From positions 1-64,000 of the forward strand of contig CDMY01000312.1 of the NCBI GenBank assembly GCA_001179505.1: a stretch of 64,000 nt of DNA, given 5' to 3'. The number at the start of each line of letters is the position of its first letter. Positions within the stretch are counted from its first letter, which is position 1. The notes beneath the pieces were generated by a model. The model was not told where the DNA came from. It made no database searches and saw only the letters and a list, made by a program, of their open reading frames with translations. Both the position numbers and the translations under genes were made by a program. The stretch is from Vitrella brassicaformis CCMP3155. Lineage: Eukaryota; Protista; Chromerida. Shown here piece by piece: positions 3,900-30,401 of the stretch.

Positions 3900-6170
3900 G
3901 CTGGCCAGACGCATCTATCTCGTCAGTGACATCACTATCGTCGTCCTGGAAACCAGTCTGCTGGACCACACACAAGCAGACACAATGTGAGCAAGGGAAT
4001 GTCTGAGAGTGTGTCATGATACCCCTCTGTGGCCGCGTCCCTCCCTCCTACGGCCGCGTGGGGGCGCCCGTCGATCGGCGGGAAGTGGCGCATCGTCCTC
4101 CTCAAACAACTGTCCACATGACTCTACCTGCAAACAGGAAATGGCCGTTGTCGCCCATGGATTCACTTGTGTGTGAATATATGCGTACGCTGTCCGCTGC
4201 TTCTGCTGTTCCAGTGCCCCCTTCCCTGCGCGATGGGGGCCTGTCGAATCGGCCCTGCAATCGCTGAGCTAATTTCTAGTCCTCCTCCTCCATCTCATCC
4301 GTCTGGTTGATGTCGTCATGCACTTGCCTGGCATATTCCTCGTCGAACTGCAGGAGACACATAGAAGGGGAATGCCGACAGATGGGAGTGATGCAGCTGA
4401 TGTGAGTTGTGGGTTATATATATGCGTCCAACCTACCACTGGATTCGCCACGTAGCCTAAGGGTGAGGCAGCCGCTGCAGCAGCAGCTGCTGCCGGTGCA
4501 GCTGGTGCCGATGACGGTGACGGGTGGGGGTTCTGAAGGGCAGCCACCGAAACAGACACATGGATGACCGTCAAGACAGCCGTGTATGGAGCAATGTGTG
4601 TGCGTACTTGGGGGGGTTGATAGCCACCACCGCCACCACCACCACCAGCAGCAGCAGCAGCAGCGGCAGCGGTAGCTCCAGATGAGGGTGCGTTGGAACC
4701 TCCATGTCTCTTGAAAACGACACCAACATAGGCAGGAAGAAGCAGCCATTGCGAGACATAGCAGCGGCAGGTTTGGTGGCCACATGATGTCGTGTGTATG
4801 TGTGGAGGATGCCCACCGGTTGTGCGTGTGGTGCGGGGTGGCCGCCAAACAACACAGAATCGCCCGGAGCAGCCCCACCGCCCACCTTTGCCTGCACACA
4901 TCCATCGAACAACAACGACGTGAATGGAGTTTGTCCGCCATTGAATGGGGATAAGGTGGGGAGGGGGGAGGGGAGAGCGTATGTGATGATGCCTACGTGA
5001 GGGGAGTGGGGTGAAGGTTTGGGGGAGGCCTCGCCTACACCAGTTCCACCAATCTGCGCACACACCAAGACAGCCAACAACAACAACGCGCCCGATGACA
5101 TGGGTCTGTTTGGATCGTTTTCGTGTGCACAGTGGTGTGCAGGGCCGTACCTGCGCGCCAGTGTTCGCTTCAGCTCTGCGAAACCCATAGATCTTCATCT
5201 TAGGCCCCTGCATGCGTCCAATACATTCACCACTTATACTCACATACGTACATGTGCATCAGTGCGTCTTGGCGAGTCATGTGAGTGGGAAGGACGTACC
5301 TGACCCCTGTCTGCCGCTTCCTGTGGTTGGTCGTCGTCGCGCTCTAGGTCAATGTGGATGGGCTCCCGCGTCTGCGCTACGCCCCCAGACACACCCTTCC
5401 CTGCTCGGCTGCCGGTGCCCCTGCTGCTACCGGCCAGCCCAGACGCCAAACCGCCACGACCTATCCCGTTTGACACACGAACAGGGGGATGCAGGAAAGG
5501 AAATGAATGGTGTTGTGTGACGTACCGAATGGTGCAGACCGGCCGAGACCAAACATCTGTGCATCAACCGACACATGCAACAAAAAAGGGTGAATGGATG
5601 TGGTGTTGGGGGTGGGGAGCCTCTGGTGTAAGATACCTGTTGGTGTTTAGAGGGGGCCAAGTTCCAATCGTACGCCGGCCCCTGCTGTTGGTGCGGGTGA
5701 CTACTCGACAACATCTGCTCCGACCCAATGTCGTCCCGCTGCACAGCCACACATCCATCCATACAAATAGCAGAGTGAACCATGGGTGAGGTTGTGTGCC
5801 GCTGGATGGGGGTCAGCTTCGCGTACCTGCTCGGCCTCGTAGAGAGGGGAAGAGACCTCCTGTTGACCCACAACAGACAAGCCCCACACATACATACACG
5901 CATCCACCACGCAATGGATGGAAGATCTGTGCAAGCACGTGCGCACCATGGGAGCATACGGAACATCAGGTTGGTCCTGGGATGACGAAGCAGCGGCGGC
6001 GGCGGCAGCAGCAGGAGCTGGTGGCGACGGCACGGCCGACGGGGACGCCAAACCGCTGTCACGACCACCCTGAAAGGCGACACCCACATCGACCAGCAAA
6101 GAGACGATTCATAGAGTCGGTGAGGGAGGATTTGGTGTTGTCGACTTACCTGCCCTTGGTCCGTAGAGGT
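3900..6170 (-). CDS. Upstream low-complexity exons of the same KDZ locus, with one in-frame TAG at 4276-4278; the 5' end is lost in the gap
   Basis: A series of short GT-AG exons, mostly phase 0, encodes Ala/Gly/Pro/Gln-rich sequence (e.g. GGRDSGLASPSAVPSPPAPAAAA, REPIHIDLERDDDQPQE, FDEEYARQVHDD...EED*KLAQRLQ). They lead in frame into the 3843 exon. Confidence 0.55.
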
Positions 6171-26200: not shown

Positions 26201-26735
26201 GTACGTCTTCAACCACATGGACATCGTGCTGCAGCTCGTCCCGCCAGGCCGAGACGTCGCCGCCAGCCCCCCCGCACTCTACACCCAAGACGGCGCACCC
26301 CACGCCGCCCCCGCCACCCATCCCCAGCTCCACCCTCCCCCACACCAGGCCCCGCCAATCATGCAGTTCCGACCCGGCCCCTTGCCTCCGCCATACCCCT
26401 TCCCACCCGTCCCTTCATACGATGCCGCCGGCAACCTCGTGTGGCCGTGGCCGCACCCCCCGATGTACCCAATGCCCTTCCCGGGTGCGATACGGCCACA
26501 AGTGAGGCCCCAGCAGCAGGGCGAGATTGGGGCGGGGGCCGAGGGCCCGATGCCCTCGCCTGTGCCGGTGCCATGGCCGTACTGGCCTGGCCCTGCGCGG
26601 CCGCCATTCCTGCCGATGCCGCCCCCACCAGGGGCCGGGCCGCCCCAGGGTGCTGGTCAGCGGCCGGCGATGCCGCCACAGGCGTCTGATGGAGGAGGCA
26701 TGGCGCAGTGGCAAAGCAGTGTGGGAGACGGATGA
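23226..26735 (+). CDS. Kelch-repeat plus BTB/POZ protein (LZTR1-like layout) with a Pro-rich tail, multi-exon
   Basis: Kelch GG motifs (MMIFCGG, VWMFGGLIYG..DLYRFSTHQLTW, LLVYGGFNE..AIYW); BTB HDVAFRVEGKVIKAHKPIL, VFRLVLTHMYEG, LLYAAHHLDIPLLEAQC, NVLELFRIA; PPPYP-rich end with stop at 26735. Confidence 0.82.
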
Positions 26736-27134
26736 GCTGCTGCGGTGTGGGATGGGTGCCTTGACGTGTTCGGTAGCTGTAGAGGTGCGGTGGGCCCGAT
26801 TGGGGCAGACAGGTTCATTGGTGTCATTGGTGAAGTGAGATGTGCAACGGACGGATCTTTGCACATGATTGCGTGAACGACGGTCTCTGGTGTTACATAT
26901 TTGATCGGCGCTGAATCAAACCACCGAACTACCACACTCGTGTCACCAGACTACCACACACCTTAGGACGTCCCGCATACTGAAAACAGCGAGGGCATCT
27001 ACACAGCCGACACATGGGAGTGATTAGAACACGGAGCGCGACGGACAGACAGACAGACAGACAGATAGCTGCAGACAGAAGGTGGACATAGAATACATCT
27101 GCACACGCGCGCCATGATGGATGGATGGACTTAA

Positions 27135-29282
27135 TCATAGCTGCAGGTTAAAGGTCTCCTGACAATGAAAACCCAGCGACTGCAACGTGGCCTCCGACAC
27201 ATCCCCAACACCCTGCACATCCACACACCCGCACACACACATACACACACAGGTGGGATCTGTTACCCCCTTGCCCACCGCAGCACTCGCTCACATGTGT
27301 GCGTGGGTATGCGACGATGCGGCCTCCCGCCTCGCGCGTGTAGCGCTTCGGCATAGACAAACTGACAGACAGACAGAAGGAGAGTCAGGTATGTGACTGG
27401 CACATGCATCACACAGAGTACTGTATGTGTCTGCAACCGTTCGTTCTCTCATCAGGTCGCCCACCCCGCAAATGAGACAACGAGCGACCAGGTGCCCCTC
27501 ATGCTGAGCCTGGGTACGATGCCGCTCAGGTCCTCCCTCTCTAGCCAGTGAAACACACCCTGTCGGTCAGCCACCACACATGGGACAAACACACACGCAG
27601 CAAAGGAATCACTCCATCCATCCATCCAGATGTGCATGAGTGCATTCGTACTTTGATGGTGTGTGAGGGCGCGAACTTGCGAGTGATGCGGGCGCCCGAA
27701 GGGAGACGAATCTGCCATTACATATATTGAGGTCAGTTGGGAGGGAGTTTCTCTCTCTCCTGCCCACCGACCCCACCCACTCTCCTCCCATCACCTGTAC
27801 AGCACACGTGGGGCCAGACGTGGGCTCCTCAGGAGGCGGGAGGAGCGCCTGCACACACACACAGAAACACAGACAGACACAGACGCACTCACCGAGTACC
27901 TGTGCTGTGCAGGTACGACACACCCATTATGGATGGACCCACACAAACACAAACATTACCTGCTGGTGGGTCTCCAGCGACAGTCGCAGCGCCTCAGCCA
28001 GCTCAGGATCCACGCACACAGACCGCTTGCACAGGTCGTCAAGGTTTCGCGCGTCGGCAACGGCGGGGGGCGGACAGCTAGAGTGTGGTTCAACGCTGTC
28101 GTTGTTGAACAGGCAGTAGGCCTTGCGACTCGTGCTGCCTTCCGTGAACTCCTGCATGCGACGCGCCACCTCCTGCAGCTGGCTCGAATCGTAGCTGCCG
28201 AAACACCGACCCCGGGCACCATGCAGCCGGAAATACAGCCCCCACGAGCAGCACGAGTCAACGCTCGCTGGCGGGTGCCAACCTGACGCACAAGACCATG
28301 ACCGACAGACAGACAAGGATCCTCCTGCATGGCTGCATGCCATGCGTGGCTGGCTGATGGATGACCAATCCCGCCTCACCGCTGTCCATCTGGGCGGCCC
28401 ACATCTTTCCATTGCTTTTCATTTCGTTGATGAGGTGGGTGCGCGCGAGGCACCAGTCGTTGGCCCTCAGCACATCATACACCTCCTTGGTGTACCACGA
28501 CGGATGCCGGAACTCGAAGGCAAAACGACCTTGACTGCCAGAAACACACAGAGCATAGTGAATGGTGTTGTTCACTAAGGCACTCAGTCACTCACTGACC
28601 GTTAGAGGGCAGAACGGTCGACAGATCCTTGAGGCGCTGGATGTTGCGCCGGAATGAGGGCGGGCACACGAAGAGAACAGGGCCGAGATGGTCATCGAGG
28701 AGCAAGCAGCCGCCCCAGAATGTCTTCCACTGCTCCTTGAAGCCGTCATCCACCAGCAGCTGCTTCTCGTCGGTGAAGTACTTGTTGGCCTTGATGGCGT
28801 ACGTGAAGGACGGCCGAGGAGCTTGTGCCTGAGGTGGCCGCGAATGAATGAGCGGATGGCATGAAGGGCACTGACTGCCGGGTCACCGACCTTCCAGCCG
28901 CGCCACGTCTGCTCGGGCGCAATCACGTAGTAAGTGGCGTTGATCTCCACACAGTCAAACTCGCTAGAAAACCTACAGGCCACACAAAGCCACAAACACG
29001 CACAGACAGAAATCACGCCACACACAGCGCTTCGTCGTCTGCGCTTCACATCCAGTGGCTTCACATGGATGCGTACCATTCGAACTGTTTCTTGGACTTT
29101 GCTTTGAGGTCCGTGGGATAGTACGGGCCGCACCAGTAGTTATAGTAGTACCCGCTCGTGCCTATGCGGATCTGCGGCGACCCGAAATGCGTGCCTCTCG
29201 ATGATGAGGCATCTACGCGAGGGGACTTGTGAGATGATGACGCTGATCCAGATGGCTCCGAAAGCGCCCGCTTGGATGCCAT
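27135..29282 (-). CDS. DUF72 (YecE/YunF-like TIM barrel) protein fused to a UIM-like helix and a C-terminal UBX domain, multi-exon
   Basis: DUF72 motifs IRIGTSGYYY..W.GPYYP, FDCVEINATYY, FTYAIKANKYFT, LGPVLFVCPPSF, FAFEFRHPSWY, YFRLHG, YCLFNND. These are followed by ELAEALRLSLE (UIM-like) and CAVQ|IRLPSGARITRKFAPSHTIK|GVFHWL...MPKRYT...|TLQSLGF..FNLQL* (UBX-like; exon 27652-27711 is an exact 20-codon phase-0 exon). Confidence 0.8.
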
Positions 29283-29576
29283 CTTGAGATCGGGCGGTTT
29301 CAGCCCGGGCGAAACCCCATCTCAGGGCATGGCGGCGACGATGGATTGATTGGTTGCTTTCTGCCTTCGGTTCCTCGTGCGAGCTTAGATAATGTGCGAT
29401 TTCCGGATCATATGACGATTGAATTCATTCAGAGAAGGTTTTTGTTGACTCGTCGCACACACCACGCATTGACAAACAGACCAACGATATAAAATGCAGC
29501 CAGCGATGATGTTTTTCTACACCCGCAGGCTGTTTTCATCTTGGCTCCCTGTGTGCTTTTGCCCCGCTGCAAGTAC

Positions 29577-30040
29577 TCACACATCTTGGTCTTGATTGTA
29601 CCGGCGGTCTCCGTTCTTCACTCGTGAGAGATATAAAATGTAGGCAACGATTGCCTGTCGAGGTGCACACATGGCAACAAACAGTCGGTCCGCCCATTGC
29701 ACCCATACATGCATACCTTCAACTTGAGTTTCTGATAATTGAGGCCGCCAGATGGACTGCCAGATGGGCTGCTCCCACTGTCGCAAACCACCGCTGCCGT
29801 CCTTGACGACGAATTTGTACTCGACAAGCCCTCTGCCGTCCGGCGGGAGTTGAATGGTGGGCGACGTCCACTCTGGGAAGGTCTCGGCACACGTGGCCAA
29901 CGGGATGGCCTTGGTCGGGTTCCAGCCGCCAAAAGTCGAGTCCGCACCGACGACACACACGCGCTCGCCCACTTGGGTCCCCACGCACATAGACACGGTC
30001 TGCGCACGTACTCCATAGACAGCCCAAACCTCCTGCACAC
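29577..30040 (-). CDS. CBM20 (starch-binding) domain protein, apparently stand-alone; start uncertain
   Basis: YGVRAQT..GERVCVVGADSTFGGWNPTKAIPLAT..FPEWTSPTIQLP..VEYKFVVKDGSGGLRQWE matches the CBM20 pattern. Confidence 0.7.
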
Positions 30041-30401
30041 GATCACCCACACGTGTGCAGACCGTGTCTATGTGTGTGTATCTTTTACCTCGCATCGGCT
30101 AGGTTCGTCCTCGTATCCGAACAAATCCTCCGCCGCAAATGGGCAGGCCTCGGATAGACCTCAACTTCTCAAAATCCTCGCCAAATGTAAACTCTTGATG
30201 GGGCGTCTCAAAATCTCGCCTGTTCTTCCCACGCCTTCGCACTCCGTTTCCCACAGCTACAGCACCACGAACTCGTCAGGGGCGCGACACGTCAAGGAAA
30301 AAGGCGGACAAAAGGCGGCACTTCGGATCGACATCGCTGTACGGGTCTACAGTGCGGCGCCTGGCTGCCTTCGCACAGGAGGCTTTGACTGACCTGGCGA
30401 G

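What the first reader, a model, noticed from the sequence alone, without database searches (positions are those of the whole stretch)
27135..29282. DUF72 TIM barrel fused to UIM and UBX: a candidate p97/Cdc48-recruiting enzyme
Seen: the DUF72 frame runs without a stop into ELAEALRLSLE and then through small phase-compatible exons into a UBX-like domain (QIRLPSGARITRKF..T..; MPKR at the usual FPR loop; TLQSLG at the end). Known: UBX domains bind p97/Cdc48, UIMs bind ubiquitin, and DUF72 is a mostly prokaryotic family of unknown function structurally compared to UV-endonuclease-like TIM barrels. Inference: a bacterial-type enzyme has been wired into ubiquitin/p97 extraction, possibly for DNA-protein or nucleic-acid damage processing. 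I do not know this fusion from elsewhere.
Basis: partly seen in the sequence, partly recalled or inferred. Interest (0 to 1): 0.82.

Follow-up and report, generated by a model that had tools for sequence, protein, structure and literature searches.

The report
Eroded DUF72-UIM-UBX fusion gene copy
A real, transcribed gene of the alga-like alveolate Vitrella brassicaformis joins an uncharacterised DUF72 barrel enzyme to a ubiquitin-motif-plus-UBX (Cdc48/p97-docking) tail, but this is the more worn of two copies in the genome: its docking loop, two pocket residues and its main splice form are all damaged.

Summary
On the minus strand, 29282-27135, ten GT..AG exons encode DUF72 (Pfam 147.9 bits), a UIM-like helix and a UBX domain (30.9 bits). 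The organism is Vitrella brassicaformis. The public model (403 aa, 'UBX domain-containing protein') misses the last two exons.

- The scan already found a 54%-identical paralog on another contig (s1-215892). It has two UIMs and a canonical R...FPR loop, so the fusion predates the duplication. I found it in no other organism.
- In this copy FPR has become FAG, followed by four exonised intron codons. 'MPKR' is therefore not the FPR homolog.
- The UIM falls below the Pfam threshold.
- Two DUF72 pocket residues that are near-invariant in 54 relatives are replaced (His to Asp116, Gln to Val150).
- Both transcriptomes use a cryptic acceptor 5 nt upstream at exon 4, which gives a 194-aa truncated ORF. 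The 447-aa fusion needs a splice form I did not see.
- The barrel sits in a clade whose named members are all eukaryotic, so recent bacterial transfer is not needed.
- Its fold is as close to sugar isomerases as to UV/AP endonucleases.

Best reading: a diverging or decaying paralog of a lineage-specific Cdc48 cofactor family.

The parts
29283..29370 (-). 5' UTR as far as the transcript contigs reach. It holds two tiny upstream ORFs and an in-frame stop before the ATG.
   Evidence: X6 record 20 and X5 record 18 end at 29370/29368. Translation.
29077..29282 (-). Exon 1: start codon, Ser-rich N-terminal 35 aa (conserved in the paralog) and the first DUF72 strand (IGTSGYYY).
   Evidence: Joint 29077|28972 in X5 and X6.
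28891..28972 (-). Exon 2: DUF72 (VEINATYY motif).
   Evidence: Pfam DUF72 E 7.5e-5, profile 15-40. Both joints in RNA contigs.
28600..28828 (-). Exon 3: DUF72. It holds Lys109, Asp116 (family His) and Val150 (family Gln).
   Evidence: Pfam DUF72 38.1 bits, profile 44-108. Residue table.
28380..28534 (-). Exon 4 as spliced in both transcriptomes. The frame-keeping acceptor, orthologous to the paralog's, lies 5 nt inside it, so that exon would start at 28529. Use of 28534 shifts the frame and gives a stop 22 codons later.
   Evidence: Joint 28534|28600 skipping 65 nt in X5 and X6. Three-frame translation. DNA alignment with the paralog. Pfam DUF72 profile 112-138.
27960..28282 (-). Exon 5: last third of DUF72 (YFRLHG, LFNN) running without an intron into the UIM-like helix.
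   Evidence: Pfam DUF72 profile 154-203. 100% match to P0001 224-330.
27972..28010 (-). UIM-like motif DPELAEALRLSLE (residues 314-326). The core Leu-x-x-Ala-x-x-x-Ser is present. It scores below Pfam's UIM threshold.
   Evidence: No Pfam UIM hit. Aligns to FAF1's pre-UBX helix at E 7.3e-5 and to the paralog's second UIM, which does pass Pfam at 22.9 bits. Predicted helix 315-331.
27795..27848 (-). Exon 6: Pro-rich linker and the first UBX residues.
   Evidence: Joint 27795|27711 in X5 and X6. Its length fits the contig records.
27652..27711 (-). Exon 7: UBX strands 1-2 (IRLPSGARITRKF). The signature Arg is present.
   Evidence: Pfam UBX E 1.3e-3 on 20 aa. P0001 342-376 matches UBX profile 4-38. 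Aligns to p47 and FAF1 UBX.
27465..27559 (-). Exon 8: UBX helix and strand 3. It ends in FAG where the paralog has FPR.
   Evidence: Joints 27652|27559 and 27465|27361. Alignments.
27295..27361 (-). Exon 9. The first four codons (LSMP) are exonised intron, then KRYTREAGGRIVAYPRTH follows. This exon is missing from the public gene model.
   Evidence: Joint 27361|27465 in X5. X6 record 19 covers 27294-27362. The acceptor shift is shown.
27135..27212 (-). Exon 10: end of UBX (TLQSLGF...NLQL) and stop TGA at 27135-27137. This exon is missing from the public gene model.
   Evidence: X6 record 19 and X5 record 16 join 27211/27212 to 27294/27295. 68% identity to the paralog's last exon.
26400..27134 (-). 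3' UTR. It overlaps the 3' end of a convergent BTB/Kelch gene on the plus strand, and the transcript contigs merge the two genes.
   Evidence: X5 record 16 and X6 record 19 run on to 26400 and beyond. BTB hit. Called gene with Kelch/BTB.

Best explanation
This locus (Vitrella brassicaformis CDMY01000312.1, 27135-29282, minus strand) is the more derived of two paralogs of a lineage-specific gene family. In that family a eukaryotic-clade DUF72 TIM barrel is followed by a FAF1/UBXN7/PUX-style cassette: a UIM helix, a Pro-rich linker and a UBX domain, encoded by mini-exons.

How the family probably works (inferred). The barrel's conserved phosphate-binding pocket holds a ligand that is still unknown; damaged nucleic acid and a sugar phosphate are both possible. 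The UIM binds ubiquitin or NEDD8 on a neighbouring protein. The UBX docks on the N domain of Cdc48, so that the unfoldase and the DUF72 ligand site are brought together.

What is shown. The fusion arose before the duplication, because both copies share the architecture and the intron positions.

What this copy has lost:
- one UIM;
- the FPR docking loop, now FAG plus a 4-residue insertion from a shifted acceptor;
- two near-invariant pocket residues (His to Asp116, Gln to Val150);
- productive splicing as the main form, because a cryptic upstream AG at exon 4 is the form assembled in both transcriptomes and breaks the frame.

The ORF is otherwise intact over 447 codons, and dN/dS against the paralog is 0.36. 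I therefore read it as a partly disabled, diverging copy. At most it makes small amounts of a fusion protein that is probably non-catalytic or altered in specificity and binds Cdc48 weakly or atypically. It is not the fully working p97-recruiting enzyme that was proposed.
For: - Architecture and transcription.
- Organism, public model P0001 and paralog P0021 (54% identity, DUF72 + UIM + UBX).
- Same intron positions in both copies.
- The two copies are sisters (SH-aLRT 95) inside a 16-row clade (99) whose named members are all eukaryotic.
- FPR to FAG, and LSMP from loss of the acceptor (AG to CG).
- R...FPR is the p97-binding signature of UBX domains: PMC5389986.
- His and Gln are replaced here, while the other 54 aligned family members have Q in 54 of 54 and H in 52 of 53 filled positions. 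These positions match Tm1631 His79 and Gln114, which were modelled in silico as contacting DNA and phosphate: PMC3828134.
- Cryptic acceptor used in X5 and X6, giving a 194-aa ORF.
- dN 0.29, dS 0.80.
- This copy has the longer branch, 0.46 against 0.32.
- The tail resembles FAF1's pre-UBX helix plus UBX (E 7.3e-5), p47 UBX, and UIM-UBX clusters of plants and algae.
Against: - Contigs keep only the commoner path at a 5-nt bubble, so a substantial in-frame isoform may exist.
- The ORF has no stop in 447 codons, and the exon-9 acceptor shift kept the frame. Both speak for continued selection on a full-length product.
- Asp for His could still act in a pocket.
- p47 binds p97 with FPN, so the loop tolerates some change. 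An M-P-K-R stretch next to the loop might substitute.
- The paralog also lacks an invariant residue (Arg to Trp at the Tm1631 Arg191 position). The changes may therefore reflect a family-wide shift of function rather than decay of this copy.
- No binding or activity was tested.
- This copy's full UBX could not be folded, because a spliced product has no reference.
Confidence: 0.5

Rival explanations
1. A fully functional p97/Cdc48-recruiting enzyme. The in-frame splice form is made in useful amounts. The barrel is catalytically active, perhaps on damaged DNA or DNA-protein adducts. The UIM binds ubiquitin and the UBX, with its MPKR-bearing loop, docks on Cdc48.
For: - An intact 447-codon ORF through ten exons with the 28529 acceptor, which is the orthologous one.
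- Most DUF72 motif residues are kept: S43, E78, N80, Y83-Y84, K109, E178-F179-R180, R241, Y253.
- A confident barrel model with pLDDT above 90 and Z 24.9 to 1VPQ.
- UBX above the Pfam cut-off with the signature Arg present.
- dN/dS of 0.36.
Against: - Both transcriptomes assemble the frame-shifted joint.
- FPR is FAG with a 4-residue insertion.
- His116 and Gln150 equivalents are lost, against 52 of 53 and 54 of 54 relatives.
- The UIM is below threshold.
- The DNA-repair link rests on in-silico work only. The fold is equally close to sugar isomerases.
Confidence: 0.25
2. An expressed pseudogene. Since the duplication this copy has lost function altogether. Its transcripts are by-products that end in a premature stop and are of no use to the cell.
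For: - The frame-shifting cryptic acceptor is the assembled form in two studies.
- Four independent erosions are present: one UIM lost, the FPR loop changed, and two pocket residues replaced.
- This copy has the faster branch.
Against: - There is no stop or frameshift in the exons themselves over 447 codons at dS 0.80.
- The exon-9 acceptor shift is in frame.
- All nine introns are still spliced precisely and the transcript is present at a depth like its neighbourhood.
- Tail and barrel both show dN/dS near 0.35 rather than 1. That value averages both lineages.
Confidence: 0.2
3. A gene-model artefact: two neighbouring genes (a DUF72 gene and a small UBX gene), or a chimeric assembly, read as one.
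For: The public model stops before the last two exons. Transcript contigs here also merge with the convergent neighbour.
Against: - Spliced contigs from two studies run from DUF72 exons through the UIM into UBX exons, with GT..AG joints on one strand.
- The frame is continuous from exon 4 to the stop.
- An independent paralog on another contig has the same order and the same introns.
- DNA run X1 covers the whole stretch in pieces without differences.
Confidence: 0.02

Closest known systems
Vitrella brassicaformis paralog P0021 (CDMY01000405.1, 529 aa; earlier scan finding s1-215892)
   Same: Same order (DUF72, UIM, Pro-rich linker, UBX). Same intron positions. 54% identity overall and about 70% in the tail. 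The two are sisters in the DUF72 tree.
   Different: The paralog has two UIM exons joined by a 13-nt micro-exon, a canonical AFPRKRY loop, a single clean exon-4 acceptor, and keeps His and Gln. It has Trp at the invariant Arg (Tm1631 Arg191) position.
UBA/UIM-UBX cofactors of p97/Cdc48: FAF1, UBXN7/UBXD7 (yeast Ubx5), plant PUX8-type
   Same: A C-terminal cassette of a UIM-type helix, a short Pro-rich linker and UBX. P0001 315-374 aligns to FAF1 at E 7.3e-5. The paralog's tail matches UBX/UIM clusters by language-model features (0.91) and by model structure (TM 0.56-0.68). The UIM of UBXN7 docks on neddylated cullins (PMC3349548).
   Different: There is no UBA or UAS domain; a DUF72 barrel takes their place. 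In this copy the R...FPR signature is broken.
Enzymes that carry a p97-docking module: OTU1/YOD1 (UBX-like + OTU), and the green-algal Josephin-UIM-UBX and UFD1_N-UBX clusters
   Same: The design principle of a catalytic or substrate-handling domain joined to a UBX-type docking domain (PMC5389986; Atlas clusters).
   Different: Those enzymes act on ubiquitin itself. DUF72 has no known activity and no known link to ubiquitin.
DUF72 / YecE family (PDB 1VPQ Tm1631, 1VPY and 1ZTV EF0366)
   Same: Pfam 147.9 bits. Modelled barrel Z 24.9 at rmsd 2.8 over 243 residues to 1VPQ. Most motif residues are kept.
   Different: Most members are stand-alone prokaryotic proteins of about 235-280 aa. This one belongs to a clade whose named members are eukaryotic, has an insert before YFRLHG, lacks the His79 and Gln114 equivalents and carries the UIM-UBX tail.
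UV damage endonuclease (UVDE) and endonuclease IV
   Same: The same xylose-isomerase-like TIM-barrel superfamily: UVDE 2J6V Z 11.6, Endo IV 1QTW Z 12.4, ASFV AP endonuclease Z 13.4. A repair role for DUF72 has been proposed in silico and from gene neighbourhoods (PMC3828134, PMC11791011).
   Different: They are no closer than sugar-phosphate isomerases and epimerases or MbnB (Z 12-14). DUF72 crystals hold no metal ions. No nuclease activity has been shown for any DUF72.

Membership tests
DUF72 (PF01904) | Match to the family HMM above the gathering score | tested here: met
   147.9 bits against a cut-off of 25.3 on P0001. Colinear hits on exons 2-5.
DUF72 (PF01904) | TIM-barrel fold of the solved members | tested here: met
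   AlphaFold2 with 56 sequences gives pLDDT above 90 over residues 36-310. 1VPQ Z 24.9, 1VPY Z 24.3, Foldseek E 6e-14.
DUF72 (PF01904) | Complete set of near-invariant pocket residues (Ser, Glu, Asn, Lys, His, Gln, Glu-Phe-Arg, Arg, Tyr) | tested here: not met
   Asp116 replaces His (52 of 53 filled positions). Val150 replaces Gln (54 of 54). The rest are kept.
UBX domain (PF00789), p97/Cdc48 cofactor | Match to the UBX HMM above the gathering score | tested here: met
   30.9 bits (whole P0001) and 34.8 bits (residues 335-400) against a cut-off of 21, covering only profile 4-39. The paralog scores 37.5 bits over profile 4-62.
UBX domain (PF00789), p97/Cdc48 cofactor | Beta-grasp fold of the whole domain | tested here: inconclusive
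   The spliced tail of this copy has no reference, so it was not folded. The paralog tail with 4 rows gave pLDDT 46, with strand-strand-helix-strand order. P0001's partial UBX gave pLDDT 50-72. The Atlas's own model of the paralog aligns to UBX clusters at TM 0.56-0.68.
UBX domain (PF00789), p97/Cdc48 cofactor | R...FPR signature in the strand 3/4 loop that enters the N-domain cleft | tested here: not met
   The Arg of IRLP is present. FPR is FAG, followed by the inserted LSMP. The paralog has AFPRKRY. The signature is defined in PMC5389986.
UBX domain (PF00789), p97/Cdc48 cofactor | Physical binding to the Cdc48/p97 N domain | not testable with these tools
   Needs a pull-down or a complex model. 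No multimer tool was available and the spliced tail has no reference.
UIM (PF02809) | Match to the UIM HMM above the gathering score | tested here: not met
   No hit on P0001:300-345 at E up to 10. The paralog's second UIM scores 22.9 bits in the whole protein and 29.3 bits in the excised piece, against a cut-off of 21.
UIM (PF02809) | Core Leu-x-x-Ala-x-x-x-Ser on a single helix with acidic flanks | tested here: met
   L317, A320 and S324 are present, with D314, E316 and E326 as flanks. Predicted helix 315-331. Only two acidic residues lie upstream of the motif.
UVDE / endonuclease IV repair nucleases | Closer structural kinship to these nucleases than to other xylose-isomerase-like barrels | tested here: not met
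   UVDE Z 11.6 and Endo IV Z 12.3-12.4. Sugar isomerases, epimerases and MbnB score Z 12-14.2. Rows within 1 Z unit count as tied.
UVDE / endonuclease IV repair nucleases | Metal-binding catalytic residues and nuclease activity | not tested
   Model coordinates are not exposed. DUF72 crystals lack metals according to PMC3828134.

The most novel reading that the evidence does not exclude
The two Vitrella DUF72-UIM-UBX proteins are not enzymes but ligand-reading Cdc48 adaptors. After the fusion the barrel was freed from catalysis, and each paralog lost a different invariant pocket residue (His and Gln here, Arg in the other). It now serves to recognise a phosphate-bearing lesion or modification and to call in Cdc48. 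This would parallel the way the dead transglutaminase fold of XPC/Rad4 reads DNA damage (that comparison is from my own knowledge). The frame-shifting acceptor of this copy would then be a regulated unproductive-splicing switch rather than decay.
Probability: 0.12. Interest if true: 0.7.

Novelty: new variant of a known kind. Interest (0 to 1): 0.4.

Why it matters
DUF72/YecE is a large and widespread family with three crystal structures and no demonstrated activity. A natural fusion to a ubiquitin-binding motif and a Cdc48-docking domain is one of the few contextual clues to what it does in eukaryotes. The clue points to work on ubiquitin-marked complexes that need an unfoldase.

The value of this locus lies mainly in comparison. 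Together with its better-preserved paralog it dates the fusion to before a duplication. It shows which parts are dispensable: the second UIM, FPR, and the His and Gln of the pocket. It also corrects the public gene model.

The importance is limited for three reasons. The fusion was seen in one species only. The cleaner copy was already reported by this scan. And this copy may make little or no full-length protein.

Tried and rejected
- Word search with the 161-aa ORF over exon 5 found nothing, because the length filter shut out the 403-aa model.
- PDB search with the 20-aa UBX exon alone found nothing.
- Atlas search with the 31-aa exon 8 gave no usable hit.
- Word search with the paralog's tail (residues 395-529) returned only the two Vitrella proteins, so the donor of the tail could not be traced that way.
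- AlphaFold2 of the paralog tail with a 4-row alignment was too poor to search with (pLDDT 46).
- The full spliced tail of this copy was not folded or scanned as one piece. It has no reference and I did not type it in.
- A metagenome scan with exon 5 found no relative.
- No tandem second copy is present in the window (tblastn).
- Recent bacterial transfer was rejected on the tree. The caveats are that the eukaryote rows were gathered with the C-terminal query and that several rows have no taxon.
- 'Two genes' was rejected on the spliced contigs.
- An N-terminal stretch of the Myrmecia relative looked UBA-like by eye, but Pfam gave nothing, so I dropped it.
Full report
**What is there**

The minus strand between 29282 and 27135 carries a ten-exon gene in a 57-63% G+C eukaryotic sequence with short introns of 62-111 nt. 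Every intron is GT..AG.

Pfam DUF72 hits fall on exons 2, 3, 4 and 5 in profile order: 15-40, 44-108, 112-138 and 154-203. The 20-residue exon at 27711-27652 alone gives a UBX hit at E 1.3e-3.

An exhaustive search with exon 5 returned a 100%-identical 403-aa protein, P0001. It is the public model of this locus. NCBI lists it as an unnamed protein of Vitrella brassicaformis CCMP3155, UniRef calls it 'UBX domain-containing protein', and it lies on contig CDMY01000312.1 at the window's own coordinates. On P0001, DUF72 scores 147.9 bits and UBX 30.9 bits, both above Pfam's cut-offs.

**Transcript evidence**

Of the runs that hold the stretch, X5 and X6 come from two studies of one organism label. 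They hold only about half of its words, and their contigs are spliced, so they are RNA.

Their joints confirm exon ends at 29077, 28972/28891, 28828/28600, 28534/28380, 28282, 27795, 27711/27652, 27559/27465, 27361/27295 and 27212. The e5/e6 joint at 27960|27848 is not listed, because a repeat there was skipped. It follows from the 114 contig letters that lie between exon 5 and exon 8, which equal 54 + 60.

X5 record 16 runs from exon 3 to beyond the stop. X6 record 20 runs from the 5' UTR to exon 8. DUF72 and UBX exons are therefore on one molecule.

The public model reads through the exon-8 donor (ending ...SFAGWAT) and misses exons 9 and 10. With them the product is 447 aa.

**The frame problem**

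Both transcriptomes join 28600 to 28534, a 65-nt intron. Exons 1-3 and exons 4-10 are then out of frame, and the first ORF ends after 194 codons.

The frame is kept only with the acceptor 5 nt further in, so that the exon starts at 28529. The gene predictor used that acceptor. DNA alignment shows it is the one orthologous to the paralog's single acceptor. The AG used in the RNA is an extra, upstream one.

Contigs keep only the commoner path of such a small bubble.

**The paralog, and what it shows**

P0021 is 529 aa, lies on another contig and is 54% identical. It has DUF72 (155 bits), a Pfam-significant UIM (22.9 bits) preceded by a second UIM-like exon, and UBX (37.5 bits). This is the gene the scan reported before as s1-215892. 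I reached it independently.

Its thirteen exons share the intron positions of this gene. It has in addition an intron between barrel and UIM, a second UIM exon and a 13-nt micro-exon.

In a tree of 55 DUF72 sequences the two copies are sisters (SH-aLRT 95). They sit inside a 16-row clade (99) that is separated from the bacterial and metagenomic rows. The named members of that clade are two liverworts, a trebouxiophyte alga, a dinoflagellate, Spongospora, an MMETSP protist and a bdelloid rotifer.

So the fusion predates the duplication, and the barrel need not be a recent bacterial import. None of the 19 other exhaustive-search hits carries UBX, and nor does any of the 118 non-Vitrella proteins listed from the word search. 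The word search lists only 120 of 1156 hits. It also missed several eukaryotic relatives, so absence elsewhere is likely but not proven. A metagenome scan was blank.

**Erosion in this copy**

1. *Docking loop.* UBX domains bind the p97 N domain through an R...FPR signature (PMC5389986). The paralog reads WSLVAFPRKRY. This copy reads WSLVVSFAG|LSMPKRY. By intron position and DNA alignment, FPR corresponds to FAG. The old acceptor AG is CG here, and an AG 12 nt upstream is used instead, which adds LSMP in frame.
2. *UIM.* Only one UIM is left and it fails Pfam's UIM model. The Leu-x-x-Ala-x-x-x-Ser core is present, and the segment aligns to FAF1's pre-UBX helix plus UBX at E 7.3e-5.
3. *Pocket residues.* Among the other 54 aligned family members, the positions of Tm1631 His79 and Gln114 hold His in 52 of 53 filled positions and Gln in 54 of 54. 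Here they are Asp116 and Val150. These residues were modelled, in silico only, as contacting DNA and the scissile phosphate (PMC3828134). The paralog keeps both but has Trp at the invariant Arg (Arg191) position.
4. *Splicing.* The cryptic acceptor described above.

Against full decay, the exons hold no stop over 447 codons. Against the paralog, dN is 0.29 and dS 0.80, a ratio of 0.36 that is similar in barrel and tail.

**Fold**

With 56 aligned sequences the barrel of P0001 is modelled at pLDDT above 90. It matches the DUF72 structures far above everything else: 1VPQ at Z 24.9 and 1VPY at Z 24.3.

Below them lies a plateau of xylose-isomerase-like barrels at Z 11.6-14.2. AP endonucleases, Endo IV and UVDE stand there among sugar isomerases, epimerases and MbnB. 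The fold therefore does not favour a nuclease over a sugar-phosphate enzyme. The repair idea rests on modelling and on gene neighbourhoods in prokaryotes.

The tail could not be modelled well. The paralog's tail gave pLDDT 46 with four rows, and this copy's partial UBX gave 50-72. The Atlas's own model of the paralog aligns to UBX clusters at TM 0.56-0.68. Its sequence features match UBX clusters at 0.91. These clusters include plant PUX8-type UBA-UIM-UBX proteins, FAF1-like proteins, and green-algal Josephin-UIM-UBX and UFD1_N-UBX proteins.

**Reading**

The family looks like a Cdc48 cofactor in which a DUF72 barrel has replaced the usual UBA/UAS front of a FAF1/UBXN7/PUX-type protein. The UIM of UBXN7 binds neddylated cullins (PMC3349548), so ubiquitin and NEDD8 are both candidate partners.

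For this locus I commit to 'diverging, partly disabled paralog' at 0.5. The fully working enzyme-adaptor stands at 0.25, an expressed pseudogene at 0.2 and an artefact at 0.02.

Notes of this scan list other Vitrella genes with p97-binding modules on unusual partners: AP2-SHP-UBX, PEX14-PUB and a dead phosphatase-PUB. I did not check them. If true, they suggest that such tails are shuffled often in this lineage.

**Limits**

- No binding, activity or protein evidence was obtained.
- Isoform proportions are unknown.
- The taxa of several rows in the eukaryotic clade are unknown.
- The full tail of this copy was never scanned or folded as one piece.

Noticed in passing
window 29580-30095 (-): An ORF with a clear starch-binding CBM_20 hit (E 3.8e-14) lies just upstream of the DUF72 gene. 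It is not among the called genes of the public contig. No transcript contig of X5 or X6 lies over it, apart from a trace of X6 depth in one bin. It may be an unannotated or silent gene fragment.
   Followed up: partly
window 27135-27452 (-): The public gene model (P0001) reads through the exon-8 donor and stops at 27452. RNA contigs show two further exons (27361-27295 and 27212-27135) that complete the UBX domain.
   Followed up: yes
window 26400-27211: The 3' end of this gene overlaps the 3' end of a convergent BTB/Kelch gene on the plus strand. Assembled transcript contigs merge the two, and one of them has a depth of 314.
   Followed up: partly
window from about 32613 upward (L002 1-1670): A large gene with a BRCA-2_OB1 domain lies about 3.3 kb upstream, beyond a RING-H2 gene. 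No functional link is implied.
   Followed up: no
L001 5559-5846: The paralog has two near-duplicate UIM exons, each ending in THQQ or THEQ. In the annotated model they are bridged by a 13-nt micro-exon (5685-5697). This looks like a tandem exon duplication, or like a loss in the window's copy, where barrel and UIM share one exon.
   Followed up: partly
P0021 position aligned to P0001 R241: The better-preserved paralog has Trp at an Arg that is invariant in the other 54 aligned family members. So both Vitrella copies lack some invariant pocket residue, but different ones.
   Followed up: partly
ESM Atlas clusters: Green-algal protein clusters combine Josephin + UIM + UBX and UFD1_N + UBX. UBX tails on unusual partners may therefore be common in algae.
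   Followed up: no
window 29283-29370 (-): The 5' UTR holds two very short upstream ORFs (2 and 6 codons) ahead of the main ATG.
   Followed up: no
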